Shown here: piece by piece, positions 3,339-43,778 of the stretch
Layout of the letters: the number at the start of each line of letters is the position of its first letter
Position numbering within the stretch: the first letter of the stretch is position 1
Sequence record: PP777464.1
Length of the DNA stretch: 64,000 bases
Direction: 5' to 3' (one strand)
Notes under the pieces: generated by a model
What the model was told of the DNA's origin: nothing
What the model saw: only the letters and a program-made list of their open reading frames with translations
Database searches by the model: none
Made by a program: the position numbers and the translations under genes

Positions 3339-3362
3339 TAACTATATCAGGAGTACATACAC

Positions 3363-3572: not shown

Positions 3573-3596
3573 TGCGTAAAAGGATTTAGTACTGAA

Positions 3597-3763: not shown

Positions 3764-3791
3764 TTGACTTTTTATATGAATCGTATATTAT
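3764..3791 (+). promoter_or_regulatory. Promoter for F1 array
   Basis: TTGACT 3764-3769, 16 bp, TATTAT 3786-3791; GGAG SD before 3822. Confidence 0.6.
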
Positions 3792-3821
3792 TGGATTGAT
3801 ATTATTTTTAATGGAGTCCCT

Positions 3822-6642: not shown

Positions 6643-6847
6643 TTTAAGTAAAGATGAATATTATGAACGTCTTGCAAAAACTTATCCAGCACGTAACGCC
6701 GTTTATAATAGTAACATTATTGAACGCTCAAAGAAGTTGATTGTAGTAAATGAGATTAAGATGCTTTCAGTCTTAGGAACAAACTATCAAGAGAATGCTG
6801 TACTGTTGTTAATTGATGCCCTCAAGAGAGAGATACAAAGTAAATGA
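6629..6847 (+). CDS. F1 paralog 14
   Basis: LGTNYQENA; MQM start at 6629. Confidence 0.88.
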   Translation: MQMINLSKDEYYERLAKTYPARNAVYNSNIIERSKKLIVVNEIKMLSVLGTNYQENAVLLLIDALKREIQSK

Positions 6848-7092
6848 TTAATTTATCTTTCCATGAATATCAAAAACGTTTAAATGCATCAAGGGATATA
6901 AGGATTCAAATCTTCAATAACAAAAGATTGAAACCTGACACCAGAAGAATCAAAATAATAGAAGCAGAGTTATGCAACTTCCTGGGGACGAACCATCAGG
7001 AAGGTAAGATAAAAAACTATCTTAGAGAACTCATGATTTGTATCGAAAATAAATGTGAGGTTGATGAACATGCAAATGATCAATTTAAGTAA
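6844..7092 (+). CDS. F1 paralog 15
   Basis: LGTNHQEGK. Confidence 0.88.
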   Translation: MINLSFHEYQKRLNASRDIRIQIFNNKRLKPDTRRIKIIEAELCNFLGTNHQEGKIKNYLRELMICIENKCEVDEHANDQFK

Positions 7093-7333
7093 AGATGAAT
7101 ATACCGAGCGTATGACAAAAATTACGCACAAACGTAATACAATCTATCACAACCCAGAAATTCAACACAGTAAGAAAATGATTATGATGCGTGAGTTAAA
7201 GATGGGTGTATTCTTAGGAACAAACTATCAAGAGCCAGAAGTAAATCGATTAATTGCTGAGTTACTATTGGAAATCAAAGGTAAGCTGTACTTTTATCAA
7301 ATGACCCAACCACTGAGGTGTACTGATCGATGA
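7070..7333 (+). CDS. F1 paralog 16
   Basis: LGTNYQEPE; MQM start at 7070 behind GAGG. Confidence 0.88.
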   Translation: MQMINLSKDEYTERMTKITHKRNTIYHNPEIQHSKKMIMMRELKMGVFLGTNYQEPEVNRLIAELLLEIKGKLYFYQMTQPLRCTDR

Positions 7334-7581
7334 ATGCGATGAATATTGTGAATAACATCAGATTAGCAGAAAGATTTGATAGAATTGGGGAAGCACTGAG
7401 AAGATACGATAAAGAATATGGTCATTTGAGCTTTTCTATAGAAAAGAGATATGAACTTGAAGCAGAGTTTAAAATGCAGAGTCTCTTAGGCACACAGTAT
7501 CAAAACCAATATATTCAAACTTGGATTGATTGTTTAATCCAGACAATTTATGTAAGAAACATTAAATGCAAAATGAAATGA
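7330..7581 (+). CDS. F1 paralog 17
   Basis: LGTQYQNQY. Confidence 0.88.
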   Translation: MNAMNIVNNIRLAERFDRIGEALRRYDKEYGHLSFSIEKRYELEAEFKMQSLLGTQYQNQYIQTWIDCLIQTIYVRNIKCKMK

Positions 7582-7802
7582 TATACTTAACACATGATGA
7601 GTTAACAGAAAGACTAGATAAATCCAAAAGACTTACAAATCAACTTCCTCACAACCCAAACCAAACCCCAGCGGAAAGGAGTGCAGAAGTTTTATTCCAA
7701 AGATTACCATACCTTCTTGGAACTGATAGGCAAGAGTATCATGTTGAACGTATAATTAAATATCTCAAAATTACTATTATGGAAAAAGTAAATGCAAAAT
7801 GA
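7566..7802 (+). CDS. F1 paralog 18
   Basis: LGTDRQEYH. Confidence 0.88.
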   Translation: MQNEMIYLTHDELTERLDKSKRLTNQLPHNPNQTPAERSAEVLFQRLPYLLGTDRQEYHVERIIKYLKITIMEKVNAK

Positions 7803-8049
7803 AATGAAATACTTAACAGACGATGAGTTAAAAGAACGATTAATTAAATCCAGAAAACTTACAAATCAACTTCCAAACGACACAAACAAGTCACATGCCG
7901 AAAGGAGTGCAGAAGTTTTATACATTCAACTCCTGTACTTTCTTGGAACTGACAGACAAGAGTATTACATTGAAAGTATGCTTCGATATCTTAAATTCTC
8001 TATAAAGGAAAAGGTACATGCTCAAGAATTTAAAAATCCTAACAGTTAA
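7792..8049 (+). CDS. F1 paralog 19
   Basis: LGTDRQEYY; close sister of paralog 18. Confidence 0.88.
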   Translation: MQNEMKYLTDDELKERLIKSRKLTNQLPNDTNKSHAERSAEVLYIQLLYFLGTDRQEYYIESMLRYLKFSIKEKVHAQEFKNPNS

Positions 8050-8260
8050 TGAATATCATAAGATTGTAATGAAAACTAATAGTGCAATATCTAAAAAATC
8101 AAACCCAAAGTACATACTGGAACACACATTCGAAGAACGTCAATTAGCTTTAGTTGAAGCAAAACTTCTTGCACTCCTAGGAACAAACTATCAGGAAGAA
8201 TACATCAGAAAACTAATATACCTTTTAACTAAACACATCAGGAAAAGAAAAAAAGCATGA
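8018..8260 (+). CDS. F1 paralog 20
   Basis: LGTNYQEEY. Confidence 0.88.
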   Translation: MLKNLKILTVNEYHKIVMKTNSAISKKSNPKYILEHTFEERQLALVEAKLLALLGTNYQEEYIRKLIYLLTKHIRKRKKA

Positions 8261-8487
8261 AGCACTTGACAGATGATGAACATGGGCTTATAGTAATGGA
8301 TGTAATCAACATCGAATACAAAAAGTTGATACGCTACCGTTGTTATGAAGATAAGCAACTCGTTCTAGCAGAACAGAAGTTGTTTCGACTCTTAAACACA
8401 AACTTCCAAGCACAATACGAAGAATCGTATTTGTACCTACTGTCGAGGAAAGCAAAAAGAGATTATGAAAATTTTAAGCCACAGTGA
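8257..8487 (+). CDS. F1 paralog 21
   Basis: LNTNFQAQY. Confidence 0.88.
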   Translation: MKHLTDDEHGLIVMDVINIEYKKLIRYRCYEDKQLVLAEQKLFRLLNTNFQAQYEESYLYLLSRKAKRDYENFKPQ

Positions 8488-8680
8488 ACAAACAGAATTG
8501 TTAATCTTTAATACAAGTAAATTCTTAAACATAACATTGTCTGATATAGATGAGGATGAAAAAGAGTTACTTAGAGCAGATTTAAGAGTTCTTTTATATG
8601 TTGGAACTAACTTCCAAGAGCAATTCGTTGAGGACTACATCGATGAACTTAAAGAATCTGTACTGAGAACATGCAAATGA
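8465..8680 (+). CDS. F1 paralog 22
   Basis: VGTNFQEQF. Confidence 0.88.
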   Translation: MKILSHSEQTELLIFNTSKFLNITLSDIDEDEKELLRADLRVLLYVGTNFQEQFVEDYIDELKESVLRTCK

Positions 8681-8913
8681 AAATCCTTTCACCAAGTGAA
8701 TACCACGAACTATTAAGTAGTTTAATTCTAAAATTGTATATAGCAAAGACCACAGATTTACCTGATGAAGAAAAAAATATTCTAATGAGTGAAATCTATG
8801 TTAATTCTACCCTAGGGACTAACTATCAAGAATGTAATATTAATGATTACATCAAAGAACTAAAAAGGTTTATCCAATGCAAATGCGAATCATTACCGAC
8901 GAAGAATACCTAA
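8671..8913 (+). CDS. F1 paralog 23
   Basis: LGTNYQECN. Confidence 0.88.
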   Translation: MQMKILSPSEYHELLSSLILKLYIAKTTDLPDEEKNILMSEIYVNSTLGTNYQECNINDYIKELKRFIQCKCESLPTKNT

Positions 8914-9128
8914 CAATCATAAATGGACTGTTTTCGAAGTTATTTGCCATTAACACATCAAAACTTCCAGATACTGATAAAATTATTAAGTTAAATGAAA
9001 TCTACGTTCAAGCTACTCTAGGAACAAACTATCAAGAAGCCAATGTGTATAATTACATTAATACACTCAAAAGGGTAATAAAATTAAAATGCACAGACAG
9101 CACAAACAGCCAATACACAAACCCCTAG
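8877..9128 (+). CDS. F1 paralog 24
   Basis: LGTNYQEAN; sister of paralog 23. Confidence 0.88.
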   Translation: MQMRIITDEEYLTIINGLFSKLFAINTSKLPDTDKIIKLNEIYVQATLGTNYQEANVYNYINTLKRVIKLKCTDSTNSQYTNP

Positions 9129-9328
9129 GAACAGCAGAATACATTGAACTAATGGCTGCAAACTTCTCATCCTTTAAGAAACTGATGCAAGAATCAAATA
9201 ATGATTTAGAATATCATATCAAAAGTTCAGATTTAAGATTACTACTCACTCTAGGAACAGACAGTCAGTACAAATTCGTACAGGAGCATATTAGAGCACT
9301 TTTAAATGGCATCAGGGATAAACTATGA
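9089..9328 (+). CDS. F1 paralog 25
   Basis: LGTDSQYKF. Confidence 0.85.
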   Translation: MHRQHKQPIHKPLGTAEYIELMAANFSSFKKLMQESNNDLEYHIKSSDLRLLLTLGTDSQYKFVQEHIRALLNGIRDKL

Positions 9329-9540
9329 AGGAAATATCAAATCAAGAGTACTTGGCACTATTCAGGAAGAATAATCACAAATATATGGCACTTGATTCAA
9401 GAACTGATATAAGTGAACTTCAGAAAAATCTTTTGCGTTCAGAGATGATAGTACTGACACTCTTAGGAACACAGCATCAAGAGAGAACTGTTAATTCACA
9501 CATAGAGATTCTTATGCAGATAGTACAGGAAAAGATATGA
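9325..9540 (+). CDS. F1 paralog 26
   Basis: LGTQHQERT. Confidence 0.88.
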   Translation: MKEISNQEYLALFRKNNHKYMALDSRTDISELQKNLLRSEMIVLTLLGTQHQERTVNSHIEILMQIVQEKI

Positions 9541-9758
9541 GAATCATAACACAACAAGATATGCTTAAGTTCGCAAGGGTTCATGCATCTGAATTTGATG
9601 CTATATTATCAAAAAGTTACAACAACCCTTATACACAAGATGTACATTACAGTGAATTATGGATGTATATACTTTTAGGTACAGATCATCAAGAGCAAGC
9701 AGTACAGAAGTATTTGAGAGCTTTACGTGATGCTACAGCTAATGGAGTACATGTTTAA
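9537..9758 (+). CDS. F1 paralog 27
   Basis: LGTDHQEQA. Confidence 0.88.
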   Translation: MRIITQQDMLKFARVHASEFDAILSKSYNNPYTQDVHYSELWMYILLGTDHQEQAVQKYLRALRDATANGVHV

Positions 9759-9759
9759 T

Positions 9760-10011
9760 ATGAAAGTACTGACAGAACTAGAAATGTATCATAGATTTAA
9801 TAAGTACTATCATTTACTTAAGCCTATACAGAGAATTAAATGTCCATTTGAAGAGAAACAGGTTTTAATCTATGAGCACAAGTTCTTTGTATCATTAGGT
9901 ACAGATCAACAAGAGTACTATTTGACGTTGTACTTGATTACATTAATAGATTTCATTCACTATAAAACCACACAATCTAAACAAGCTAATAAAGAGAAAT
10001 ATGAAAACTAA
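9760..10011 (+). CDS. F1 paralog 28
   Basis: LGTDQQEYY; start probably 9760 (MKVLTELE), ORF open from 9727. Confidence 0.85.
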   Translation: MKVLTELEMYHRFNKYYHLLKPIQRIKCPFEEKQVLIYEHKFFVSLGTDQQEYYLTLYLITLIDFIHYKTTQSKQANKEKYEN

Positions 10012-10339
10012 TATAAAACTCAAGGTATATAAATCATTTGCAAGTACATACATCAAATGCCATACATGTAACTCTGTAATGGACTACAAAGGTAAGCCAT
10101 TTGCACTTACTTATGATAATACAAGAGGTTTTTATATATCTTTTGCTGATTACAAATATAACATATACGAACACATTGACATTGAAGATTTAAGTACTTT
10201 ATCTGAAGAGGAATACTTTCAAGAATCATTAGTATGGGATTTGGAGTTTCCTATGCCATTAGTACATAAGATGATAGTACTAATAAAAGAAACTAAACCT
10301 GTACCTAATGGTTATGAAGAACACATTATTGAGTATTAA
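10001..10339 (+). CDS. F2 protein (EExxFQxSL family)
   Basis: LSEEEYFQESLVWD. Confidence 0.88.
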   Translation: MKTNIKLKVYKSFASTYIKCHTCNSVMDYKGKPFALTYDNTRGFYISFADYKYNIYEHIDIEDLSTLSEEEYFQESLVWDLEFPMPLVHKMIVLIKETKPVPNGYEEHIIEY

Positions 10340-10353
10340 TATATAAGGTAACT

Positions 10354-10695
10354 ATGAAAACTAATATACAACTCAATGTATACAGTTCAGAAGAACATAC
10401 ATATATCAAATGCAGTCTATGTAAAGATGTAATGGACTACAAGGGTAAGCCATTCACAATTACTTATGATTCTTATGTTAATGATTTATATATATCATTT
10501 CTTAATTACGAAAAGAAAATATACAAGCACGTTGATATTAAAGATTTAAGTACTTTATCTGAAGAAGAATACTTTCAAGAATCATTAGTATGGGATTTAG
10601 AATTTCCTATGCCATTAGTACATAAAATGGTAGTCCTAATGAAAGAAACTAAACCGGAGTTTAATGGTTATGAAGAACACATCGTTGAGTACTAA
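10354..10695 (+). CDS. F2 protein, recent duplicate of 10001
   Basis: LSEEEYFQESLVWD; C-terminal third nearly identical to 10001. Confidence 0.88.
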   Translation: MKTNIQLNVYSSEEHTYIKCSLCKDVMDYKGKPFTITYDSYVNDLYISFLNYEKKIYKHVDIKDLSTLSEEEYFQESLVWDLEFPMPLVHKMVVLMKETKPEFNGYEEHIVEY

Positions 10696-10698
10696 ACA

Positions 10699-10923
10699 AT
10701 GAAAATATTATCATACAAAGATTACCGCAAGCTTCGCGGTATTTTGCGACCAGAAATTCAAAGAATTAATTCTCTTCCTATATCTAATGCAGAATGTTCA
10801 GTACTGAAAGATGAGTTAATATTAAAACACACAGTAGGAACTAACTATCAAGCTGATAGTGTTCGATATCTAATTTGGGGATTAATATGCATAGTAAAGG
10901 AAAAACAAGCTCAAGTACTGTGA
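10699..10923 (+). CDS. F1 paralog (dispersed)
   Basis: VGTNYQADS. Confidence 0.85.
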   Translation: MKILSYKDYRKLRGILRPEIQRINSLPISNAECSVLKDELILKHTVGTNYQADSVRYLIWGLICIVKEKQAQVL

Positions 10924-11249
10924 CAATCGAAGTGAATTCTATTAATGCTGGTAATGCAGTAGATAAGTTCTTTATTGCTCAAGGGTACAGGAAAGATATT
11001 CATCAATATTGTTCAGTATATGGGGAGTACAATAGTACTGAAGATATAATTTATTGGTCAACACATCAAGATTATCTAACTAAAATTGGCATTCCAGATG
11101 TTAGTACTTTATCTGAAGAAGAATACTTTCAGTACAGCTTAGTACATGATTTACCTATACCTTTAGGGTTAATCAAGGGTATACAGGAAGAGGTTCATAA
11201 GCTTAAATCCATGAGTAAAGGTACTTTCATTAGAACAGTGCAATACTAG
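10875..11249 (+). CDS. F2 protein
   Basis: LSEEEYFQYSLVHD; start uncertain. Confidence 0.82.
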   Translation: MGINMHSKGKTSSSTVTIEVNSINAGNAVDKFFIAQGYRKDIHQYCSVYGEYNSTEDIIYWSTHQDYLTKIGIPDVSTLSEEEYFQYSLVHDLPIPLGLIKGIQEEVHKLKSMSKGTFIRTVQY

Positions 11250-11250
11250 C

Positions 11251-11279
11251 TTGACAGTACTTTTCATTACTGATATAGT
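11251..11279 (+). promoter_or_regulatory. sigma70 promoter
   Basis: TTGACA-17-TATAGT with TG extension; AGTACT overlapping -35. Confidence 0.7.
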
Positions 11280-11308
11280 ACCTGTACGTTAATCATGGGG
11301 TAAAAATT

Positions 11309-11554
11309 ATGTTGAATTTTTTAAATTTCCTTATCGTCTTGTGTATTGTTCTTGGGATTGCACCATTTGTATTGTATTTCATGGATTCAGATGAAATGCA
11401 GAAGATGAATTGTACAAGGACAGGACAGAGTAGAGTAGAGACGATTCTTATGCCTGTTACGGTTATTGTTAACAACATGCCCATTACCAACATGGTCCCT
11501 ACCCTAACGACAACGTACCAGTACTCTTGTACAGACGGAGAGAGGTGGAGATAA
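11309..11554 (+). CDS. Small membrane-anchored protein
   Basis: N-terminal hydrophobic helix, Cys pair flanking a beta-hairpin-like segment. Confidence 0.75.
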   Translation: MLNFLNFLIVLCIVLGIAPFVLYFMDSDEMQKMNCTRTGQSRVETILMPVTVIVNNMPITNMVPTLTTTYQYSCTDGERWR

Positions 11555-11877
11555 TGCGTAAGTTCAATTGTATTGTACGTAAGAATTCATGTTACATTGT
11601 AGTAGCTGATTTTAATACAGGTTCTGGATTGAAGATATTTGAGTACAGAAAATGCAATAATTCTTTTCATTGGAAATTGGGTGCAAGAAAAGCAAAAACA
11701 ATTTCAGTACCGAATTTATGTTCTATCTCTGAAGAAGAAGAGTTTCAGTACTTGTTAGTACATGATGATTCTTTAGGATTTACATTAGAAGATATGAAGA
11801 AAGTACAACAGCAGATGATTGCACATTGTCATCTTCCAAAGAATTTTGTTCAACACGTATGTGAATTCCACATATAA
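11527..11877 (+). CDS. F2 protein
   Basis: ISEEEEFQYLLVHD. Confidence 0.85.
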   Translation: MYRRREVEIMRKFNCIVRKNSCYIVVADFNTGSGLKIFEYRKCNNSFHWKLGARKAKTISVPNLCSISEEEEFQYLLVHDDSLGFTLEDMKKVQQQMIAHCHLPKNFVQHVCEFHI

Positions 11878-13187: not shown

Positions 13188-13748
13188 ATGAATGATATTG
13201 AGTTATTGGTACATAAGATTTGCACAATATCGTTAGTGCTGGACAATGCGAATACAGTACAGAGTTCCCTTTTAAGAATTAATAAAGTTGGGAGTAGTTT
13301 ATATTTGGAAGTAAAAGCTGGTTTTGCAGGACAGTACAATGATAAAATCAAAGAAGAAGTTAAGGGAAATGAAGATGCTTTCATTGAGGTTTGTGCAACA
13401 GTTGGTTCAAATCCAATTTCAGTATCACCTTTAATGCGAAATGAAAATTCAGAATTTGATTCCAGTTTTGAAGGTTATTTGTGGTACAATTATGGTGATG
13501 ATTATTTTATATATCAGAATTCCAAAACGGATTATAGTGAAGAAGGTATAAAATTCATTGATCCTTACAATGAAGCAGAAGTATTTCAGACATCCCTAAT
13601 ATACAATACAAATCAAATGAAGTATCTTATGTTGTTTAGTACAATGCATTTGAATCCATTGAAAGATAATTTAAAATTTTTCATTCGTTTAGAATTAGTT
13701 GATATTGCTTATGATCTTTTAATGCAAGGATATAGTTATGAAGTATAA
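13188..13748 (+). CDS. F2 protein
   Basis: NEAEVFQTSLIYN; ends YDLLMQGYSYEV. Confidence 0.85.
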   Translation: MNDIELLVHKICTISLVLDNANTVQSSLLRINKVGSSLYLEVKAGFAGQYNDKIKEEVKGNEDAFIEVCATVGSNPISVSPLMRNENSEFDSSFEGYLWYNYGDDYFIYQNSKTDYSEEGIKFIDPYNEAEVFQTSLIYNTNQMKYLMLFSTMHLNPLKDNLKFFIRLELVDIAYDLLMQGYSYEV

Positions 13749-13818
13749 AATGCTTTATACAAAAGATATGATTTATGTTGAATTAGAAGACAATGACGAT
13801 GTATCCATCAATAGGTAA
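13738..13818 (+). pseudogene. Truncated copy of the 14321/14653-type F2 gene (26 codons)
   Basis: MKYKMLYTKDMIYVELEDNDDVSINR* matches the N-terminus MKYKMLYTL..IYVELE; 36-bp junction identical at 13719 and 14302. Confidence 0.75.
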
Positions 13819-13824
13819 TAATAT

Positions 13825-14331
13825 ATGAATGAGATAGAATTATTAGCACACAAGATTAGTACAGTAATGCTTATGCTCAAGAATAATCATTCTATGCATA
13901 AGTACATTTTTATAGGTGATTTACGCATAGAAGATAGATATGATAAATTATCGTTTATGTTTAAAGATGAAAGTAATGCAAAAGTTTGTTTTGCAGCATT
14001 TGCCCAAGGCAATCCAGAACAAGCATCTCCTGTTATATATGAAAATAGTGAAGGGTATTTGTGGGTCAACACAAACGATTATTTCTTTTATGTTTTGAAA
14101 CAAGATGATGAAGTAGAAGCACGAATTGATTTAATTGATATTAGTACAGATTGTAGTGCTGAATTATTTCAGAAATCGTTATTATACAGTCCTCGTCAAA
14201 TACATTATCTAAAGTTATTCAGTTCATTGTACGCGAATCCTTTAATTAAGGGTTTTAAATTTTATATCAAAATTCCGCACCTTTCAAACGTTTATGATTT
14301 ATTAATGCAAGGATATAGTTATGAAGTATAA
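13825..14331 (+). CDS. F2 protein, paralog of 13188
   Basis: CSAELFQKSLLYS; same C-terminus YDLLMQGYSYEV. Confidence 0.85.
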   Translation: MNEIELLAHKISTVMLMLKNNHSMHKYIFIGDLRIEDRYDKLSFMFKDESNAKVCFAAFAQGNPEQASPVIYENSEGYLWVNTNDYFFYVLKQDDEVEARIDLIDISTDCSAELFQKSLLYSPRQIHYLKLFSSLYANPLIKGFKFYIKIPHLSNVYDLLMQGYSYEV

Positions 14332-14632
14332 AATGCTGTATACATTAACATTAATATATGTAGAATTAGAATCCGATTCAGATGCATGGAATTTGGTTAA
14401 AGAGGTCGATACCAATCAATGGTACATGGCAAATTTAGACGCACATGTTGTTACGGATTATTTTATAGATTTTAATACATTATCTGAAGAAGAATTTTTC
14501 CAAATGCAATTGGTGGTTGACATGTACGGACATGACATGGTAACATTAAGAAATATACAGAAAGTCGTTAATGAATTCCAAAGCAAGAAAGATTATGAAG
14601 TAGGAGCGTATTATGACATCGACGTACAGTGA
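14321..14632 (+). CDS. F2 protein
   Basis: LSEEEFFQMQLVVD. Confidence 0.85.
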   Translation: MKYKMLYTLTLIYVELESDSDAWNLVKEVDTNQWYMANLDAHVVTDYFIDFNTLSEEEFFQMQLVVDMYGHDMVTLRNIQKVVNEFQSKKDYEVGAYYDIDVQ

Positions 14633-14979
14633 AAGCAATGAGTACAATAGTTATGAAGTATAAAATGCTTTATACATTATCAGGGATATATGTAGAATTA
14701 GAACCCGATTATCCAGATGGATGGAATTTTATTAAACGCTCCGAAAGAAATACATGGCACATGGCACATTTGGATAATGACGTAATATTAGACAATTTTG
14801 TGGATTTTAATACATTATCAGAAGAAGAATTCTTCCAAATGCAATGTGTGCTTGACACAAAAGGATTTGATGTGCTATTATTAAGGAATATACAGAAAGC
14901 TGTTAACGAATTAATATCCAATGACGAGTTAGGCAAAGTGAGGCTGTTCCATGATCTCGAAGTACCGTACCAGCAATGA
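14629..14979 (+). CDS. F2 protein, paralog of 14321
   Basis: LSEEEFFQMQCVLD; likely start ATG 14653. Confidence 0.85.
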   Translation: MKAMSTIVMKYKMLYTLSGIYVELEPDYPDGWNFIKRSERNTWHMAHLDNDVILDNFVDFNTLSEEEFFQMQCVLDTKGFDVLLLRNIQKAVNELISNDELGKVRLFHDLEVPYQQ

Positions 14980-19816: not shown

Positions 19817-19866
19817 NNNNNNNNNNNNNNNNNNNNNNNNNNNNNNNNNNNNNNNNNNNNNNNNNN
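19817..19866. other. Assembly gap (50 N)
   Basis: Run of N; true length unknown. Confidence 0.99.
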
Positions 19867-19915: not shown

Positions 19916-20329
19916 TTGGAGTTTACCTTATTAATTACAGTAGAGATTATTATGGAAATAAAATATAAAGAATTTTGTATAGGGACATGGATGTACACGG
20001 GTGAGTTGATTACGTGTTGTAATTTGTACAAAGGTGATTTAAACTACACAAGGGGCAAGGTTATAAAGTTCTGGAATTCACAATTTTATTTAATGGATCT
20101 TGGTACTGGATTTAGTTGTAAAGCAACCGATATGCTGGACTATACCTTAATGGATGATGCTGCACTATTTCAGGAGTCATTAGTATTTGACAAGAAGTAC
20201 ATCTGTACATTAGAAGAGATTGTTGAAATCCAGCGTAGAATTAAATGCATTCACAGGGAATGTATAGATAAATGGTGTAAAACTGGTGAAACTAATTTTA
20301 GTAATCATTTCAATCTAGGGGAAGAGTGA
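19916..20329 (+). CDS. F2 protein, FDKKY subgroup
   Basis: MDDAALFQESLVFDKKY; CNLxKGD. Confidence 0.85.
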   Translation: MEFTLLITVEIIMEIKYKEFCIGTWMYTGELITCCNLYKGDLNYTRGKVIKFWNSQFYLMDLGTGFSCKATDMLDYTLMDDAALFQESLVFDKKYICTLEEIVEIQRRIKCIHRECIDKWCKTGETNFSNHFNLGEE

Positions 20330-20685
20330 TGGAATTTGATTTTTTAATATCAGTACATTCTTTTAAGAACAGTTTTCAGTACTTTTGTAATTTAAACAAA
20401 GGTGATTTGATGCACAGTGCAAATGAGTATATTCATTTTACGGATGGTAAATTCACATTCATTGATTACAATTCATTACAGTATCCACATCAGGATATGC
20501 CGGATTATACAGTAATGGATGCCGCTGAACTATTTCAGGAGTCATTAGTATTTGATAAGAAGTACTTGTGTACATTTGAAGAAGTTATTGCAATACAAAA
20601 TGAAATGAAAGAGTATGACTCTTTGAATAAAGGCAATGTCAGTATTAATCAAGAATACAAATTCAATATAGGAATACCAGAATGA
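20326..20685 (+). CDS. F2 protein, FDKKY subgroup
   Basis: MDAAELFQESLVFDKKY. Confidence 0.87.
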   Translation: MMEFDFLISVHSFKNSFQYFCNLNKGDLMHSANEYIHFTDGKFTFIDYNSLQYPHQDMPDYTVMDAAELFQESLVFDKKYLCTFEEVIAIQNEMKEYDSLNKGNVSINQEYKFNIGIPE

Positions 20686-21047
20686 CATATGATTATTCAA
20701 TGTACGTTTGTAAGTCCAGAACGGGGTGGGATTTGTGCTGTAATCTTGTCAAGGGTGATTCGGAACATGAGTTGAGTTTATATATTCAGTACTCGGATTT
20801 GTGTTTTAATTTCATTGATGTATTACATGATGACTTCGACTATAACTCTGAAAGTATTACAGATTATACAGTACTGGATGATGTTGAACTATTTCAAGCT
20901 TCTTTGGTGTTTGACAAGAATAAGTACTCATGTACAATAGAAGATATGATTTTTATACAAAATGAAATGAAGAGATATGTTAAAGAAAACACCTTTGATA
21001 CATCTACACCAACAACAAGTAATTATTATTTCAATACAGGTGAGTAA
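20682..21047 (+). CDS. F2 protein, FDKKY subgroup
   Basis: LDDVELFQASLVFDKNKY. Confidence 0.87.
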   Translation: MTYDYSMYVCKSRTGWDLCCNLVKGDSEHELSLYIQYSDLCFNFIDVLHDDFDYNSESITDYTVLDDVELFQASLVFDKNKYSCTIEDMIFIQNEMKRYVKENTFDTSTPTTSNYYFNTGE

Positions 21048-21048
21048 T

Positions 21049-21393
21049 ATGGAATATGATTTTTCTATGTTTATACCTAAGATTAGTACTTCACTGGAAG
21101 TGTATTGCAATCTTAACAAAGGTGATTATGAACACAAAATGGATCAGTACATTAAATTTAATGGTTCTTACTTTAGCTTCATTGATTATCAGGCCAAAGG
21201 AACAGTTGTAGAAAATATGAAAGACTATACAACTGTACAGGGTGAGGCTGAAATATTTCAAGAGTCATTAATATTTGACAAGAAGTACTTGTGTACACTA
21301 GAGGAAGTTATTGAACTCCAACAGAAGATGAAAGAATATAGAAGAATCTGTATAGAGACTGATTCCAAAGATAGGTATCGTTTTAAGCTATGA
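21049..21393 (+). CDS. F2 protein, FDKKY subgroup
   Basis: GEAEIFQESLIFDKKY; start moved to MEYDFS 21049. Confidence 0.87.
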   Translation: MEYDFSMFIPKISTSLEVYCNLNKGDYEHKMDQYIKFNGSYFSFIDYQAKGTVVENMKDYTTVQGEAEIFQESLIFDKKYLCTLEEVIELQQKMKEYRRICIETDSKDRYRFKL

Positions 21394-21575
21394 ATAAAAA
21401 AGAACAAATGGAATCATTCATGAATACAATACTTCGACGATTCGTAATTGATATTAGACATAACAACAGCATTAGGAATGACATGTACTTCGGTACATAT
21501 GATATTAGTGAATTGTATATAGCTAATATTCACATGGTTTACCGAGATTATATCAAGACACAACACAGGAGTTGA
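21390..21575 (+). CDS. Small hypothetical protein
   Basis: 61 aa, ATGA-coupled. Confidence 0.65.
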   Translation: MNKKEQMESFMNTILRRFVIDIRHNNSIRNDMYFGTYDISELYIANIHMVYRDYIKTQHRS

Positions 21576-21576
21576 T

Positions 21577-22047
21577 ATGAGTTTTGCAAGAGCATTAGAA
21601 ATTGCTAAGTTAATTGATTTATGTAAAAAGGAAATAGTACTCAATCAACTCAATGGGTATCTATTCAAGGAAGGTAAAGCTTATTGTCGAATGATATACG
21701 ATGACAGTAGTGAGTACATTCACATGTACGAAGAAAACTTAGATTCTTCTGAAACAACACTCACTGGGTGTGATGTTAATCTGGAAGATAATTACATGTA
21801 CTTCTGTCGTGATGCTGATATTTTAATACAATATACTGACATTATAACTGGTGCAGCAGAGAAACATCTTCCGTATTCAGTACTGGATAATGACTGGGGA
21901 AGTGAAGAGTTCTACTTCCAGCAGAATACTATCTACGAGGAATATGTGCTTGACAAGCTTGTCATTCTGTGGTACTTTAATAATACAGATTGTCCTAGCT
22001 TCTATTTGGACTTGGATCTACTACGAGTTATTAAAGAGGATATATGA
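21577..22047 (+). CDS. F2 protein, MSLxSAL subgroup
   Basis: WGSEEFYFQQNTIYE ... FYLDLD. Confidence 0.87.
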   Translation: MSFARALEIAKLIDLCKKEIVLNQLNGYLFKEGKAYCRMIYDDSSEYIHMYEENLDSSETTLTGCDVNLEDNYMYFCRDADILIQYTDIITGAAEKHLPYSVLDNDWGSEEFYFQQNTIYEEYVLDKLVILWYFNNTDCPSFYLDLDLLRVIKEDI

Positions 22048-22484
22048 GTTTAGCAAGTGCACTTAAACTGGCACACAAAATACATCACTTCCACGATAAC
22101 ATAAAAAGTGGTTTCTATGGTGATAAAGTAAGTGCATTTGGTAATGAGTATTATCTATCAGGTATAAAGACATACTCTGATGATATTTTACTTATGGGCC
22201 ATGATAAAGACAATACTATACAGTACTCTTCATGTAGTCAATATACTAGTTTTTTTGTATATATTCCAGGTACTAAGATTACTTTTGACACATCAAATAC
22301 ACCTGTTGACTTCGGGGTACTTGATGGGCCGTGGGGTACTGAAGAGTATTACTTCCAACAGAGTCTTATTTTTAACCAAGAAATGCTTGATTCCTTGGTT
22401 GTTTTGTGGTACTTTAAGGAATTGAATTTTGAACCCTTCTTCCTTGACTGGGGAGCATGTGAATATTTAAGTACAGGGGATTAG
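22044..22484 (+). CDS. F2 protein, MSLxSAL subgroup
   Basis: GPWGTEEYYFQQSLIFN. Confidence 0.87.
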   Translation: MSLASALKLAHKIHHFHDNIKSGFYGDKVSAFGNEYYLSGIKTYSDDILLMGHDKDNTIQYSSCSQYTSFFVYIPGTKITFDTSNTPVDFGVLDGPWGTEEYYFQQSLIFNQEMLDSLVVLWYFKELNFEPFFLDWGACEYLSTGD

Positions 22485-22486
22485 TA

Positions 22487-22978
22487 ATGTCATTAGAAAG
22501 TGCATTGAAAGAAGCAAAGAAGATTCATGAGTACATGATTATGGTACAAGAAGGTTCAGTGCCTGGTGTGTATAAAACATCTGATACTGAATTTTTTGTA
22601 AAAGACCGCGACGATTATGATGAGTCAGAGATATGTGCAGAAACGTTAGTACTACACACTGATACGGGTGATACTGATGACTGTGAATATCATATGTACA
22701 ATCAGTACATTAGTTATTGTAGAGATGAAGATATTATAATTTACAGTCCTGATTACGATGATTATGACACAATCATTCCGTATTCAGTACTGGAAGGTCC
22801 GTGGGATAGTGAAGAATATTACTTCCAGAACAGTACTGTGTACAATGAAGAAGAATTAGATGTTATTGTAATTATGTGGTACTTTAAAAGTATTGGTTCT
22901 GATAGTTTCTATTTCGATTATGAATACGTAGAGAATACTGTAGGGGAAGATAATGTCATTACAAAGTGCTCTGGATAA
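22487..22978 (+). CDS. F2 protein, MSLxSAL subgroup
   Basis: GPWDSEEYYFQNSTVYN. Confidence 0.87.
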   Translation: MSLESALKEAKKIHEYMIMVQEGSVPGVYKTSDTEFFVKDRDDYDESEICAETLVLHTDTGDTDDCEYHMYNQYISYCRDEDIIIYSPDYDDYDTIIPYSVLEGPWDSEEYYFQNSTVYNEEELDVIVIMWYFKSIGSDSFYFDYEYVENTVGEDNVITKCSG

Positions 22979-23396
22979 AGCAAAAGAACTACAGGTATAT
23001 ATTGAAGATATCAAGGCTGGGAAGTTCGAAGAAGTATACAAAGCCGAGAATGGTAACTACTACAAGGATAGTGATTTTACCACAACTACAGTTATTCTTG
23101 GGCTGAATTCCAAAAGTCCCGCAGATTTTTCACAATACAATCCAGATGCAGAATTTATCAGTTATGCTTATGGTGGTGAAATCCGTTTTTATAATCGCAG
23201 CAGACCTTTAAAATTGAACTTTGAAGTACTGAAAGGTCCGTGGGATAGTGAAGAGTATTACTTTCAGAATAGTACTTTGTATGATGATGAAGTACTAGAT
23301 ACTTTAGTTATTATGTGGTACTTTAAAAGTATTGATAGTACAAGATTTTATTTGGATTATGAATATGTACGTGAAGCATATAAGGGCAAACGATGA
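22953..23396 (+). CDS. F2 protein, MSLxSAL subgroup
   Basis: GPWDSEEYYFQNSTLYD. Confidence 0.87.
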   Translation: MSLQSALDKAKELQVYIEDIKAGKFEEVYKAENGNYYKDSDFTTTTVILGLNSKSPADFSQYNPDAEFISYAYGGEIRFYNRSRPLKLNFEVLKGPWDSEEYYFQNSTLYDDEVLDTLVIMWYFKSIDSTRFYLDYEYVREAYKGKR

Positions 23397-23707
23397 AATT
23401 CTTATACAGTATTCAGTACATTCCTGGTACAATTAGTTTAATGTATTTCTTCGATCATGATAATTTCCAGCTCCTTGCCATTAGAAGATGTAATGAATCT
23501 TTAATGATTGAATATCTTCACGATTGTGATTATATTCCTGACTTCCTTGAATGCGATTACAGAGATGATCATGAATCATTTATTTTTCAGGAATCACTTG
23601 TATGGGATAAGAGAATTAATTTTTATGCTTTACTTGAGATACAAAAACAAGTGAAGTACTACTGGGATTACTTAATTACCCAAAAATATATAGAGATTGA
23701 AATATAA
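23393..23707 (+). CDS. F2 protein
   Basis: HESFIFQESLVWDKR. Confidence 0.85.
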   Translation: MKFLYSIQYIPGTISLMYFFDHDNFQLLAIRRCNESLMIEYLHDCDYIPDFLECDYRDDHESFIFQESLVWDKRINFYALLEIQKQVKYYWDYLITQKYIEIEI

Positions 23708-26630: not shown

Positions 26631-26990
26631 ATGAATACCATTAGTATTACGTACTACACAACGAAAAAATACGTTTGTTGTTTACTTTCGTTAAAGACAA
26701 ATGATGATATGTTTGAAATGGCGGCATATACATTAGAATTATCAGAAGATGGTTTTCAATGTCATGAAGCGTACTCAAATACACGTGAAGATACAATTGA
26801 TACTACGCTAATGCAAGAAGATGAGTTATTTCAAGAAAGTTTAGTATGGGATAAAAAATACTATTGTGATTTTGATTTTCTTTGTTTAATCCAGAAAGAA
26901 ATGAAAAGGATCTTCGACAATTATCCGGTGAAGAGATTGAGTACTAAGCCGGAGCAGTACAGGAGAATTTTATTCCGTTATGAAGACTGA
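26631..26990 (+). CDS. F2 protein
   Basis: MQEDELFQESLVWDKKY. Confidence 0.86.
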   Translation: MNTISITYYTTKKYVCCLLSLKTNDDMFEMAAYTLELSEDGFQCHEAYSNTREDTIDTTLMQEDELFQESLVWDKKYYCDFDFLCLIQKEMKRIFDNYPVKRLSTKPEQYRRILFRYED

Positions 26991-27318
26991 ATTAGTAAAA
27001 ATAATGTACGCAACTCACACTAAGTTATTATTGGTTAAAATGAATTATAACAGAAAACATAATGAATTCTGTACATTAATCCGAAATGAGGAATCATTTA
27101 CATTGCGTACCAATGATAAGCCAATGCTAACTATAAATGATTTTTCATGTTTAGATACAGGTGAATTGTTCCAGGAGTCATTAGTACTGGATAGTAGTAT
27201 ACATTTGGAAATTGAAGTACTACAACAGTACCAGATACTTTTGAATCGTATTATGGAAAATTATCCATGTGAAGTTGGTGGACCAATGCAATTCAAATCA
27301 AAGATGTATGAACTATGA
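26980..27318 (+). CDS. F2 protein
   Basis: DTGELFQESLVLD. Confidence 0.85.
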   Translation: MKTELVKIMYATHTKLLLVKMNYNRKHNEFCTLIRNEESFTLRTNDKPMLTINDFSCLDTGELFQESLVLDSSIHLEIEVLQQYQILLNRIMENYPCEVGGPMQFKSKMYEL

Positions 27319-42550: not shown

Positions 42551-42576
42551 GACATACCATAAGTTTATGATATAAT
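42549..42576 (+). promoter_or_regulatory. Probable promoter upstream of the structured non-coding region
   Basis: GAGACA-16-TATAAT with TG extension. Confidence 0.55.
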
Positions 42577-42580
42577 GTAA

Positions 42581-42612
42581 GGTGACAGCAGAATATGTTG
42601 TCGCCTTTTTTT
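42581..42612 (+). terminator. Terminator-like hairpin
   Basis: GGTGACAGCA-gaata-TGTTGTCGCC + T7. Confidence 0.7.
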
Positions 42613-43210
42613 AATCCTGAAAGGTTCCATATGGAAATGATTAAAGCCTAATCCACTCGAAAAGTAGAGGGTAGATGAGTAGTCCTTTCAGTACGAACAG
42701 CAAATGAAACCCGTTAGATGATGGCATAGTTTGAACCACTCACGGCAATGCGGCTGTATAAAGAACTCCAATAGGATAAAGAGAGTTCCTCGATAGACAT
42801 ATAAGGATCGCACCTTACCAATTATCTAAGGGAGATTTCATGAGAAATTTGCGGTCGTAATTTATACAATATAGTTGCGTCCAAAATTCGTGAAATCAAA
42901 TACAAGTACTGGTCATATGGTATTTGTATTATGTGTCGGGATGTTTAAGACCGACGACCGTTGCTACAAGAACCGCGATAGAGAGAAACAGAGCAACCCG
43001 CTTTCGCCTCGTAAGAGAATTCGTGATATGAACTATGTGAAGGCCACCAGCGTCAAACTTTTTTTGTTCTTTCCCCTGCGGGGGGGATGAAATATGCTCA
43101 AGCAAACCCCGTCAATATTAATTAAAACAAATCATAGTACTTTCGTCGAATTAGACATGCGAAGCGTGTATAATTCGACTGGTGTTGATGTAGTCAACGC
43201 CATGTACAGT
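42611..43210 (+). ncRNA. Candidate large structured ncRNA (~600 nt)
   Basis: No credible ORF over ~680 nt; more than 12 nested helices with G-U pairs and a GNRA loop (see finding); strand inferred from upstream promoter. Confidence 0.65.
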
Positions 43211-43232: not shown

Positions 43233-43778
43233 ATGATGTCATTTATTAAAAAATCTAAAAGCGTCACTTATAAAACACTAGAATTTGTTGATTCAGACAA
43301 TCAGAACCAAGACCAAGAGAATTTTACTGGTTTTGTTGTGATTAAAGAAAAGGGATGTATTTCGTACATCAAAGAGTTGCAGTGCGGTTTTGAATTAACT
43401 TCCATTAAGTTATTCCCAACCAAGAAGCCTACAATTCTTAAAGCTCGTTATGGGAACTACTACGAAGAGCGTTATAGTAATAATCTAATCAGTGCGAAAG
43501 CACATATCGTCAATGGAGAACTAGAAGGAGAATATAGAAAATTCAACCCACAAGGAAAATGTGTTTGGGTTAAATACTTCAATTCAGGAAATGATGTAAC
43601 ATCAGAAATTATTGAGTTTTTAGGTTTAACATGTACCCTTGAAACTCTTCATGATTACAAATTTAATACTGAAGAAGAGTTTAATCTGATGATGCGTTAT
43701 GGATCACATTTTAAATTTTTATATGAATACAACATTGACAGTAGTACTTTTGATGACATAGTACTTAACTGTCTATAA
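43233..43778 (+). CDS. MORN-variant-like repeat protein with F2-like tail
   Basis: NGELEGEYRKFNPQGKCVWVKYF; NTEEEFNLMMRY. Confidence 0.6.
   Translation: MMSFIKKSKSVTYKTLEFVDSDNQNQDQENFTGFVVIKEKGCISYIKELQCGFELTSIKLFPTKKPTILKARYGNYYEERYSNNLISAKAHIVNGELEGEYRKFNPQGKCVWVKYFNSGNDVTSEIIEFLGLTCTLETLHDYKFNTEEEFNLMMRYGSHFKFLYEYNIDSSTFDDIVLNCL

What the first reader, a model, noticed from the sequence alone, without database searches (positions are those of the whole stretch)
42611..43210. Candidate ~600-nt highly structured non-coding RNA
Seen: the only long gene-free stretch in an otherwise packed region, and GC-richer than its flanks. Helices found by eye: TTAATC/GATTAA (42611/42639) closing CCT-gaa-AGG and TTCC-atat-GGAA; long-range TGTATAAA/TTTATACA (42755/42861), enclosing GAACTC/GAGTTC (42763/42783) and GATCGCA/TGCGGTC (42806/42850), which itself closes CCTTA/TAAGG and ATTTC-atga-GAAAT; AATACAAGTAC/GTATTTGTATT (42899/42920); GTCGG/CCGAC; GTTGCT/AGCAAC; GCTTTCGC/GTGAAGGC (43000/43037) closing CTC-GTAA-GAG (GNRA) and TTCGT/ATGAA; GTCGAATTA/TAATTCGAC (43145/43171) with inner ACATGC/GCGTGT; TGGTGTTGA/TCAACGCCA (43180/43194). 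Multi-way junctions with G-U pairs point to RNA-level selection. Known: phages carry large ornate RNAs of this size (ROOL, GOLLD) with unknown function. I see no tRNA, tmRNA, RNase P or group I intron signatures, so this may be a new class.
Basis: partly seen in the sequence, partly recalled or inferred. Interest (0 to 1): 0.82.

Follow-up and report, generated by a model that had tools for sequence, protein, structure and literature searches.

The report
Large pseudoknotted RNA of jumbo phages
The gene-free stretch encodes a real, previously uncatalogued ~600-nt folded RNA that jumbo phages of enterobacteria keep in four or five spaced copies and that small integrase-bearing defence islands of their host bacteria also carry, so it may be the link between those islands and the phages.

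Summary
The finding holds. Window ~42583-43205 (+) is a large structured RNA gene, not coding sequence and not a chance fold. It has no Rfam 15, tRNA or tmRNA match.

The window is an Asteriusvirus coliphage, 100% identical to Ecwhy_1 and fEgEco12. This copy is one of four dispersed paralogues, about 72% identical to each other. Related genera (GAP32, BF, fHe-Yen9-04, XbC2, 7t3) have five. All copies are syntenic across genera, lie on the main strand, and are unusually evenly spaced.

Across 41-66 diverged copies, 72 base pairs stay 92-97% paired, against 72-76% in shuffles. The compensatory changes include three pseudoknots.

Most copies have a TGnTATAAT promoter just upstream.

The same RNA occurs once in the conserved backbone of small integrative islands of Enterobacterales. 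These islands carry a serine or tyrosine integrase, a CI/Cro-like switch and defence cargo, but I recognised no replication or transfer genes in them.

Function is not shown. My favoured guess (~0.35) is a locally acting origin or primer RNA that the islands copy in order to be replicated and transduced by the jumbo phage. Rivals are a trans-acting RNP or ornate RNA, and an antitermination leader. Transcription is not directly proven.

The parts
42568..42576 (+). Extended -10 promoter, TG-a-TATAAT, with no clear -35.
   Evidence: Consensus scan. TGnTA[TC]A[AC]T lies upstream of the 5' domain in 51 of 66 copies, and 9 more have a -10-like hexamer only. It is visible in the alignments.
42579..42607 (+). 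12-bp hairpin plus U-run. It is the terminator of the upstream operon and probably also the 5'-terminal stem-loop of the RNA.
   Evidence: The same promoter-then-hairpin layout occurs in the GAP32 orthologue. Whether the RNA starts inside the stem is inferred from -10 spacing only.
42583..43205 (+). Whole structured RNA. The 5' end is inferred from the -10. The 3' end is the end of the last conserved hairpin.
   Evidence: The family HMM matches 42612-43121 at E = 1.6e-112, the only copy in the window. The 3' module is shared with phage and island copies.
42617..42691 (+). P1/PK3: 42617-24 pairs with 42684-91. The 3' strand sits in the loop of stem 42679-81/42692-94, so this is a pseudoknot.
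   Evidence: 86-87% paired, all 8 pairs show double changes, 0 of 500 shuffles reach it. The closing stem is 100% paired.
42625..42636 (+). P1a: variable hairpin, TTCC/GGAA in this copy.
   Evidence: Present in all copies with different sequences and lengths; 97 compensatory cells.
42654..42671 (+). P2: 5-bp stem closing the near-invariant loop GAAAAGUA.
   Evidence: 85-89% paired, 5 of 5 pairs show double changes.
42697..42757 (+). P3 (42697-701/42753-57) encloses P4 (42711-14/42742-45) and a variable arm. Flanked by the conserved CACGGCAAUGCGGC.
   Evidence: P3 is 98-100% paired with compensatory changes. P4 never varies, so it is uninformative.
42763..42788 (+). P5 hairpin, GAACUC/GAGUUC.
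   Evidence: The strongest covariation: 92-94% paired, 144 compensatory cells, 4-6 pair types per position.
42802..42834 (+). P6 hairpin (42802-06/42813-17), followed by the near-invariant single-stranded UAAGGGAG (42827-34).
   Evidence: 82% paired, and the two arms co-vary (AAGG/CCUU, AGG/CCU, GAG/CUC) while UAAGGGAG stays fixed.
42856..42890 (+). Movable module: a hairpin with a UACAAUAU-type loop, followed by GUCCAAAAUUCG.
   Evidence: The same about 26-nt module sits here in some paralogues, inside the P13 hairpin in others, and at both places in island copies. The pairing itself is weakly supported (62%).
42899..42930 (+). P9 long hairpin (42899-905/42924-30 and 42907-11/42918-22).
   Evidence: 82-97% paired, 186 compensatory cells. 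G-U pairs at 42910/19 and 42911/18 fix the strand.
42935..42955 (+). P10 hairpin, GUCGG/CCGAC.
   Evidence: 87-92% paired, 5 of 5 pairs show double changes.
42960..42997 (+). PK1: 42960-64 pairs with 42993-97 and crosses P11/P12.
   Evidence: 100% paired in 66 copies, 29 compensatory cells, e.g. GUUGC/GCAAC changing to GUCAU/AUGAC.
42974..43025 (+). P11 (42974-78/43021-25), P12 (42981-85/43001-05) and the P13 hairpin (43008-10/43015-17). The core motif UAGAGAGAAACAG lies here.
   Evidence: 97-100% paired, with 101, 66 and 60 compensatory cells.
42913..43031 (+). PK2: the P9 loop (42913-18) pairs with 43026-31.
   Evidence: 99-100% paired, 6 of 6 pairs show double changes. Four distinct complementary versions occur in different paralogue types.
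43072..43093 (+). G+C hairpin (43072-77/43081-86). The G-run and the following AUGAAA are near-invariant, while the C-rich arm varies.
   Evidence: The register is ambiguous because shifted pairings score about as well.
43145..43202 (+). 3' module: the GAAUU...AAUUC bracket (43145-53/43171-79) with an inner hairpin, then the terminal hairpin 43180-88/43194-202.
   Evidence: The bracket plus a following hairpin was recognised in at least 38 of 66 copies, island copies included; many sequences were cut short. Column-wise pair counts are weak.
43233..43778 (+). Next ORF (181 aa), with a ribosome-binding site right after the RNA and no terminator between.
   Evidence: Orthologues follow the orthologous RNA copy in GAP32, BF, Yen9-04, XbC2 and 7t3.

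Best explanation
SHOWN (confidence above 0.9): the region is one member of an uncatalogued family of ~0.55-0.65-kb structured RNAs read from the + strand. The fold has at least 12 covarying helices and three pseudoknots around near-invariant single-stranded motifs. Most copies have an extended -10 promoter of the host sigma-70 type just upstream.

Rak2-like jumbo phages keep 4 (Asteriusvirus) or 5 ancient paralogues. Each is syntenic across genera, all lie on the main coding strand, and the spacing is roughly even (about 50-110 kb). The same RNA is a single-copy backbone element of small integrative islands of Enterobacterales.

INFERRED mechanism (about 0.35, the figure given as confidence): the RNA acts locally on the DNA molecule that encodes it, as the transcript of a replication origin. 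Host RNA polymerase makes the folded RNA early. Its 3' part, with the invariant G-run, stays hybridised as an R-loop or is processed into a primer. The T4-like replisome of the phage is then loaded there. Several evenly spaced, co-oriented origins would serve a 350-kb genome. Islands in which I recognised no replication or transfer genes would carry one copy so that the infecting jumbo phage replicates them and then packages and transduces them.
For: RNA and structure:
- RNAalifold predicts 33 pairs in the 3' domain, 25 with double changes, and 22 pairs in the 5' domain, 17 with double changes.
- 41 bp are 97% paired against 76% in shuffles (maximum 78). 31 bp are 92% paired against 72%.
- G-U pairs fix the strand. 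Folding z is -3.5 on + and -1.6 on -.

Family and layout:
- 4 copies in G17 and fEgEco12, 5 in GAP32, BF, Yen9-04, XbC2 and 7t3, all on one strand.
- The five paralogue types form clades that each span genera, and the flanking genes are syntenic.
- Spacing CV is 0.14-0.21 in the 5-copy genomes, P about 0.001-0.004.

Stand-alone unit: the GAP32 177-kb copy lies between opposite-strand genes, with its own promoter and a hairpin about 40 nt after the RNA. The same holds in G17.

Local rather than gene-specific action: the downstream genes differ between paralogue types.

The G-run is invariant while its pairing partner varies.

Islands:
- nhmmer finds copies at E = 1e-81 to 1e-89 in Serratia, Enterobacter, Silvania, Buttiauxella and other Enterobacteriaceae genomes, and blastn finds one in E. 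coli LR-29-1.
- 9 of 9 loci fetched through the island's 286/327-aa protein carry the RNA between the integrase and the CI-like repressor.
- Cargo is Hachiman, Kiwa, CBASS Cap4 or DarT/DarG-like genes. I recognised no replication or packaging genes in these islands.

Precedents:
- Integrase-plus-defence islands without transfer genes are transduced by a jumbo phage, by an unknown mechanism (PMC12595487, PMC12772148).
- From my own knowledge, not checked here: T4 ori(uvsY) and ori(34) are R-loop origins, and plasmids carrying them are replicated and transduced by T4 (Kreuzer and Alberts 1985-86). ColE1 RNA II is a ~550-nt folded primer RNA.
Against: - No replication data of any kind were available.
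- No known origin or primer RNA needs three pseudoknots and this many invariant loops. That degree of order is typical of ribozymes and RNP scaffolds.
- T4 origins have no conserved RNA fold.
- Most copies run straight into a ribosome-binding site and ORF, as a leader would.
- The even spacing is effectively a single observation, because gene order is shared among the genomes. It is weak in the window's own genus (P about 0.03-0.08).
- The island proteins of 286 and 138 aa are of unknown function and could themselves be replication proteins.
- Transcription is not directly shown. In one search, contig depth over the element is only 2-4 times the flanks in one run and about equal in another, and DNA carry-over is possible.
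Confidence: 0.35

Rival explanations
1. A trans-acting stable RNA: the scaffold of a phage RNP, a ribozyme, a self-assembling ornate RNA like ROOL or GOLLD, or a decoy that titrates a host or phage protein. The several copies would give dosage or specialised variants. Islands would carry it to mimic or sequester the phage partner, either to sense the helper or as a defence.
For: Size, three pseudoknots and near-invariant loops are what RNP RNAs and ribozymes look like. The kissing pair PK2 has paralogue-specific complementary sequences, which could equally be intermolecular. One paralogue type is a discrete unit unrelated to its neighbours. Other large RNAs of unknown function occur in phages (10.1101/2024.12.08.627333, PMC5737381).
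Against: It does not explain why 4-5 diverged paralogues are each held at syntenic, evenly spaced, co-oriented places without homogenisation. Most copies have no terminator at the 3' end, so processing would be needed. Depth in RNA libraries is only modestly above neighbouring genes. The RNA belongs to the island backbone, not to the variable defence cargo.
Confidence: 0.3
2. A cis-acting transcription leader at the head of long transcription units. The nascent folded RNA would modify host RNA polymerase, like the put RNA of HK022 or other processive antitermination elements, or stabilise the mRNA, so that transcripts run through the many terminators of a 70-kb segment.
For: The layout is upstream terminator, then promoter, then RNA, then ribosome-binding site and ORF with no terminator between. 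The RNA is on the same strand as the bulk of genes. Three paralogue types contain a terminator-like hairpin plus U-run inside the element that would have to be read through. The even spacing would fit heads of transcription units. In islands without a CI gene the RNA directly precedes the conserved 327-aa and 138-aa operon.
Against: The 177-kb paralogue in GAP32 and the 176-kb one in G17 point into opposite-strand genes and are followed by a hairpin terminator. In most islands the RNA converges on the repressor gene. It is about ten times larger than known antitermination RNAs (my own knowledge).
Confidence: 0.2
3. Not an RNA at all: a decayed gene, an unannotated small protein gene, or a DNA-level repeat such as a binding-site array or recombination site.
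For: Some records annotate short ORFs inside it: 7t3_0243-0245 and fEgEco12 g160. The window has a 71-aa TTG ORF at 42875-43090.
Against: Only 21% of indels between copies are multiples of 3. Stop-free stretches are short and inconsistent (median 52 aa). Changes are pairwise compensatory, with G-U pairs on one strand only. The annotated ORFs differ in strand and place between records. No tandem or iterated repeat was seen in the alignments.
Confidence: 0.03

Closest known systems
ROOL and GOLLD (large ornate RNAs of phages and prophages; Rfam)
   Same: Several hundred nucleotides, many helices and pseudoknots, carried by phages, no known function.
   Different: No covariance-model match even at E up to 10. 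Found in Enterobacterales jumbo phages rather than Firmicutes or lake samples. 4-5 diverged copies per genome at even spacing. No tRNA genes in this window. Also present in integrase islands. Oligomer formation was not tested.
Origin transcripts and primer RNAs: T4 ori(uvsY)/ori(34) R-loop RNAs and ColE1 RNA II (from my own knowledge)
   Same: Made by host RNA polymerase from a promoter next to or upstream of genes. Several origins per T4 genome. RNA II is ~550 nt and must fold correctly. G-rich RNA stabilises the hybrid. DNA that carries a T4 origin is replicated and transduced by T4.
   Different: T4 origins have no conserved RNA fold. RNA II has simple stem-loops and no pseudoknots. There is no sequence relation, and nothing about replication was tested here.
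put RNA of phage HK022 and other processive antitermination leaders (from my own knowledge)
   Same: Folded nascent RNA placed just downstream of an early promoter, acting in cis, with terminators downstream.
   Different: put is ~70 nt with two stem-loops. One conserved paralogue here does not lead into co-oriented genes.
I55-type genomic islands transduced by jumbo phage JPTI55 (PMC12595487, PMC12772148)
   Same: Islands with an integrase and defence cargo, and without recognisable transfer or replication genes, that depend on a jumbo phage.
   Different: Those are 20-70-kb Pseudomonas islands with tyrosine integrases beside tmRNA. The shared RNA is not reported there. The islands here are about 10-12 kb by the gene maps, in Enterobacterales, mostly with large serine integrases. 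Their mobility is untested.
ncRNA001-004 of the Rak2-related phage PA5oct, found by RNA-seq (PMC7318152)
   Same: Gene-free, transcribed stretches of 236-619 nt in a related jumbo phage. Two are abundant throughout infection.
   Different: No sequence similarity. The family HMM finds nothing in the first 30 kb, which holds ncRNA001 and ncRNA002, and blastn finds nothing in the whole record. Structural relation was not tested.

Membership tests
Any Rfam 15 family (includes ROOL, GOLLD, HEARO, OLE, raiA, group I and II introns, RNase P, tmRNA, 6S) | Covariance-model score at or above the family's gathering threshold | tested here: not met
   0 matches in the whole window at gathering thresholds. 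At E up to 10 only four chance-level hits, all on the flanks or the terminator hairpin. No hit inside the element in 8 other copies at E up to 1.
tRNA / tmRNA | Cloverleaf or tRNA-like domain with tag reading frame, as recognised by ARAGORN | tested here: not met
   0 genes in the window.
ROOL / GOLLD-type ornate RNA | Assembly into symmetric RNA-only multimers | not testable with these tools
   Needs native gels or cryo-EM. The PK2 kissing pair could be intra- or intermolecular.
Group I intron | P3-P7 pseudoknot with the P4-P6 domain between P3 and P7, plus flanking exons of one gene | tested here: not met
   PK1 and P11/P12 cross, but only 9 nt separate their 5' strands. The flanks are separate genes with a stop, a terminator and a promoter between them.
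Riboswitch / gene-specific cis-regulatory leader | Recurs upstream of functionally related genes | tested here: not met
   Downstream proteins are orthologous within a paralogue type but unrelated between types and to the island genes. One type has no co-oriented downstream gene.
RNA-primed replication origin (T4 ori / ColE1 RNA II type) | Promoter-driven transcript that forms a persistent RNA-DNA hybrid and primes DNA synthesis; confers replication on DNA in cis | not testable with these tools
   Only circumstantial: promoter, invariant G-run, spacing and orientation, and carriage by islands in which I recognised no replication genes.
Processive antitermination RNA (put-like) | Lies between a promoter and the terminators and genes it serves, on the same strand, in every copy | tested here: inconclusive
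   True for most copies. Not true for the GAP32 177-kb and G17 176-kb copies, nor for most island copies.
Phage satellite (the islands that carry the RNA) | Helper-dependent excision, replication and packaging | not testable with these tools
   The architecture fits: integrase, CI/Cro-like switch, and no capsid, packaging or replication genes recognised. Mobility is untested.

The most novel reading that the evidence does not exclude
The RNA is the cis-acting handle of a new helper-satellite system. Rak2-like jumbo phages would start replication at 4-5 evenly spaced origins, each defined by a large pseudoknotted RNA. A widespread family of minimal defence islands in Enterobacterales (integrase, CI/Cro switch, this RNA) would copy that single element to be amplified and transduced by the phage. 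That would give both a new kind of origin RNA and the first molecular explanation of how islands without transfer genes hijack jumbo phages.
Probability: 0.25. Interest if true: 0.92.

Novelty: new member of a known kind. Interest (0 to 1): 0.82.

Why it matters
Large, intricately folded bacterial and phage RNAs are rare, and each class found so far has opened a question about function. This one has covariation strong enough to draw most of its fold, including three pseudoknots.

It sits in culturable coliphages; the record for the related Asteriusvirus Sharanji lists E. coli K12 MG1655 as host. It also comes with two unusual handles on function. One is its multi-copy, evenly spaced, co-oriented layout in 350-kb genomes. 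The other is its presence in the conserved backbone of small integrase-bearing defence islands of the phages' hosts.

A 2025 study showed that islands without transfer genes can be moved by jumbo phages, by an unknown mechanism. A shared RNA element is a concrete, testable candidate for that link. If it marks replication origins, it would also say how these giant genomes are copied.

Practically, several deposited genome records annotate spurious small ORFs across it.

Tried and rejected
- Rfam at gathering and permissive thresholds, on this copy and 8 others: nothing. ARAGORN: nothing.
- Own-genome search: no genome is held for the window. I used identical or related public records instead.
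- RNA evidence: one raw-read RNA run held no phage reads. Three contig-only runs cover the element and its flanks alike, so transcription is neither shown nor excluded. A contig break near 42600 and 2-4 times higher depth in one run are only hints.
- PA5oct ncRNAs as expressed homologues: no similarity.
- Plasmids: no match.
- Coding hypothesis: rejected.
- Gene-specific leader: rejected, because the downstream genes are unrelated.
- A phage protein partner shared with the islands: the island 286-aa and 138-aa proteins have no phage homologues. The flanking window proteins have no island homologues. The 286-aa family has no Pfam domain.
- MAFFT Q-INS-i was not installed. Variable arms (P7, P8, 3' module) therefore remain loosely aligned and their pair counts are weak.
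Typed pseudoknot strings were avoided; pseudoknots were counted by script instead.
- The literature searches found no description of this RNA.
Full report
WHAT THE WINDOW IS. The 1-kb stretch around the finding is 100% identical to Escherichia phages Ecwhy_1 and fEgEco12 and 89-99% identical to other Asteriusvirus jumbo coliphages of 350-385 kb. The upstream ORF ends at 42550. A 12-bp hairpin with a U-run follows at 42579-42607. The next ORF starts at 43233, and only short ORFs lie between. G+C rises to 0.41-0.455 against 0.337 for the window. Records of related phages either leave the stretch unannotated or place short ORFs on it that differ in strand and position from record to record.

IS IT MORE THAN CHANCE? 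The + strand folds at -161 kcal/mol, z = -3.54 against dinucleotide shuffles. The - strand gives z = -1.61. The stronger evidence is comparative. The intergenic stretch alone finds 62 phage records, and each holds 4 or 5 separate places.
- In phage G17 the four copies lie at 65, 176, 255 and 311 kb.
- In fEgEco12 they lie at 59.9, 110.7, 195.8 and 307.2 kb.
- GAP32, BF, fHe-Yen9-04, XbC2 and 7t3 have five each.
- All copies in a genome are on one strand.
- Paralogues are only about 70-74% identical.
- All G17 copies lie in gene-free gaps of 0.6-0.8 kb.

A pattern from the core finds the family in IMG/VR only on ~350-380-kb contigs and fragments of them, RaK2 included. The window holds one copy.

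STRUCTURE. I aligned 29, then 53, then 66 non-redundant copies from phage paralogues, metagenomes and bacteria. I searched all column pairs for covarying stacks. RNAalifold on tool-made alignments of 41 sequences predicts 33 pairs in the 3' domain, 25 with kept double changes, and 22 pairs in the 5' domain, 17 with double changes.

With my curated helices on those same alignments:
- 41 bp are 97% paired, against 76% in 500 column shuffles (maximum 78).
- 31 bp are 92% paired, against 72%.
- Covariation scores are about three times the shuffled values.
- Sliding the partner by 1-2 columns drops pairing to 20-60% for most supported helices; P15 is the exception.

The shuffles ignore relatedness. 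However, the compensations recur independently in the five paralogue clades and in the island copies.

Three tertiary pairings cross other helices:
- PK1, 42960-64 with 42993-97.
- PK2, where the loop of the long hairpin (42913-18) pairs with 43026-31. Four different complementary versions occur in different paralogue types.
- P1, 42617-24 with 42684-91, which lies in the loop of the stem 42679-81/42692-94.

Frequent G-U pairs, for example 42983/43003 and 42911/42918, would be C-A on the other strand, so the RNA is read from the + strand. Between the helices lie near-invariant motifs: GAAAA-GUA, GAUGAG, ACCCGUUAG, CACGGCAAUGCGGC, GAUAGACAUAU, UAAGGGAG, GACCGUUG, AGAAACAG, AACCCGCUU, GGGGGGAUGAAA, and CGUCA twice.

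A 26-nt module with a UACAAUAU-type loop followed by CCGUCCAAAAUU sits at one of two places in different phage paralogues and at both places in island copies. A constrained fold of the window copy is given.

NOT CODING, NOT A KNOWN RNA. Only 21% of indels are multiples of three, and stop-free stretches are short and inconsistent. No Rfam 15 model matches this copy or eight others, and no tRNA or tmRNA is found. The paper searches found no description of it. A related phage, PA5oct, has four RNA-seq-defined ncRNAs, but they show no similarity.

TRANSCRIPTION UNIT. TGnTATAAT-like extended -10 elements lie upstream of the 5' domain in 51 of 66 copies, island copies (TGnTATACT) included. In the window's paralogue type the -10 (42571-76) sits just before the terminator hairpin of the upstream operon. 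That hairpin would then also be the 5' stem-loop of the RNA; this point is inference.

Conservation runs on past the G+C hairpin into a 3' module, a GAAUU...AAUUC bracket followed by a terminal hairpin. This ends at about 43202 in the window. Most copies are followed within 10-40 nt by a ribosome-binding site and ORF, with no terminator. These downstream genes are orthologous within a paralogue type and unrelated between types.

One type is different. In GAP32 (177 kb) and G17 (176 kb) the copy lies between genes of the opposite strand. It has its own promoter and a hairpin about 40 nt beyond the RNA, so it is a discrete unit there.

RNA libraries: three metatranscriptome or RNA-labelled runs contain contigs over the element and over its flanks. 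In one run depth is 2-4 times higher over the element and a contig starts near 42600. The one raw-read run had no phage reads. Transcription is therefore likely but not shown.

GENOME LAYOUT. The five paralogue types form separate clades, each containing GAP32, BF or Yen9-04, and XbC2. The duplications therefore predate these genera, and each copy has been kept in place. In the five-copy genomes the gaps are 44-86 kb with CV 0.14-0.21. Random placement gives such evenness with P about 0.001-0.004. Because gene order is shared, this is one observation, not five. In Asteriusvirus, with four copies, the evenness is weak (P 0.03-0.08).

THE BACTERIAL COPIES. A looser pattern scan of species-representative bacterial genomes gave 16 hits. 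Eight are true family members by nhmmer, at E = 1e-81 to 1e-88. They include the complete Serratia fonticola GTA-SR07 chromosome, Serratia sp. 2723, Silvania hatchlandensis, Enterobacter chinensis, Enterobacteriaceae RIT714 and three MAG contigs. Each of the five genomes checked for copy number has one copy.

The element is rare:
- 2 of 401 genomes of the family.
- 2 of 5,426 complete E. coli genomes.
- No plasmid.

The context is always a small integrative island.
- In E. chinensis and Silvania the order is: large serine integrase, the RNA, an S24/CI-like repressor on the other strand, proteins of 286 and 138 aa, a resolvase, then DarT/DarG-like and UvrD-like cargo.
- Serratia sp. 2723 has the integrase, the RNA and Hachiman.
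- S. fonticola has a serine recombinase and two ParB-like proteins beside rof and tilS.
- RIT714 and E. coli LR-29-1 have tyrosine integrases; the latter island lies beside ffs.

I then fetched nine further loci through the island's 286/327-aa protein, from Enterobacter, Klebsiella, Atlantibacter and metagenomes. All nine carry the RNA in the gene-free gap after the integrase, on the integrase strand. Cargo there is Kiwa, CBASS Cap4, PLD or AAA_15/21 genes. The RNA therefore belongs to the island backbone. The 286-aa and 138-aa proteins have no phage homologues. The E. coli island copy nests inside the phage 177-kb clade, which suggests exchange between phages and islands.

WHAT IT DOES. Nothing here measures function. 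Three features argue for a local, position-dependent role: 4-5 diverged paralogues retained at fixed, spaced, co-oriented sites; unrelated downstream genes; and a copy that is not a leader for anything.

The islands point the same way. They have an integrase and a switch, but I recognised no replication, capsid or packaging genes in them. They share only this element with phages that infect their hosts. Zhao et al. (PMC12595487; commentary PMC12772148) showed that such islands can be transduced specifically by a jumbo phage, by an unknown mechanism.

In T4, as I recall and did not check here, origins are promoter-driven R-loops, and any plasmid carrying one is replicated and transduced. I therefore favour an origin or primer-RNA role, with the invariant G-run as the hybrid-forming part. 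I put this at about 0.35.

The main objection is that no known origin RNA is this ornate. A trans-acting RNP, ribozyme or self-assembling RNA (0.30) fits the architecture better but the layout worse. A put-like antitermination leader (0.20) fits most copies but not the antisense-context paralogue or most islands. A non-RNA explanation is effectively excluded (0.03).

VERDICT. This is a new family of large pseudoknotted RNA, filed for now with the other large phage RNAs of unknown function. Its genomic behaviour is unusual: multi-copy, evenly spaced, and shared with defence islands. That behaviour makes specific, cheap experiments possible.

Noticed in passing
window 949-1026, 1288-1339, 1926-2003, 2795-2872: Repeated ~50-78-nt elements: AAAAAGTACTTGCA, a spacer, then GTATAAT, followed in three of the four by a GAGGGGG...CCCCTC-type hairpin. 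They look like a family of early sigma-70 promoters with a 5' stem-loop, in a region of very short ORFs.
   Followed up: no
window 4000-11800, 13700-14900, 20000-23400, 26800-27200: Many tandem arrays of diverged paralogous short genes with periods of about 210-470 nt (repeat families D1-D14), typical of jumbo-phage early regions.
   Followed up: no
window 3295-4418 and 1935-2470: Two other stretches without a + strand ORF of 70 aa or more (1.1 kb and 0.5 kb, GC 0.37-0.40). The family HMM does not match them. They may hold small genes or other RNAs.
   Followed up: no
window 19817-19866: A run of 50 N (assembly gap or mask).
   Followed up: no
L228 2578-13464; L222 1763-12118; L227 9959-20303: A family of about 10-12-kb integrative islands in Enterobacter, Klebsiella, Escherichia, Serratia, Atlantibacter and others. 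The backbone is integrase, this RNA, a CI-like repressor, a Cro-like HTH_35 protein, proteins of 286 and 138 aa (the latter LprI-like) and a resolvase. Defence cargo varies: Kiwa, CBASS Cap4, Hachiman, DarT/DarG-like. I know of no description of it. It is a possible satellite of Rak2-like phages.
   Followed up: partly
Serratia sp. 2723 genome, G004:C9:192298-192328 (RNA at 189382-189915): A 31-nt direct repeat (94% identity) of the RNA's 5' end lies 2.4 kb downstream of the RNA. It could be an attachment-site repeat or a remnant of a second copy.
   Followed up: no
L237 2807-2980 (fEgEco12 g160); L013 1547-2147 (7t3_0243-0245): Public records annotate short hypothetical proteins inside the RNA, on differing strands. 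These are probably spurious gene calls.
   Followed up: partly
L068 and L096 (Klebsiella phage RaK2, IMG/VR 2595698293): The RaK2 copies keep the 3' pseudoknot core, but the second half of their 5' domain is very different. RaK2 shows only two clear copies. It is a divergent branch worth modelling separately.
   Followed up: no
window 42571-42607; L012 1403-1442: In this paralogue type the RNA's -10 hexamer sits 2-6 nt before the terminator hairpin of the upstream operon, an overlapping terminator and promoter layout conserved across genera. Whether the RNA starts inside the stem is unknown.
   Followed up: partly
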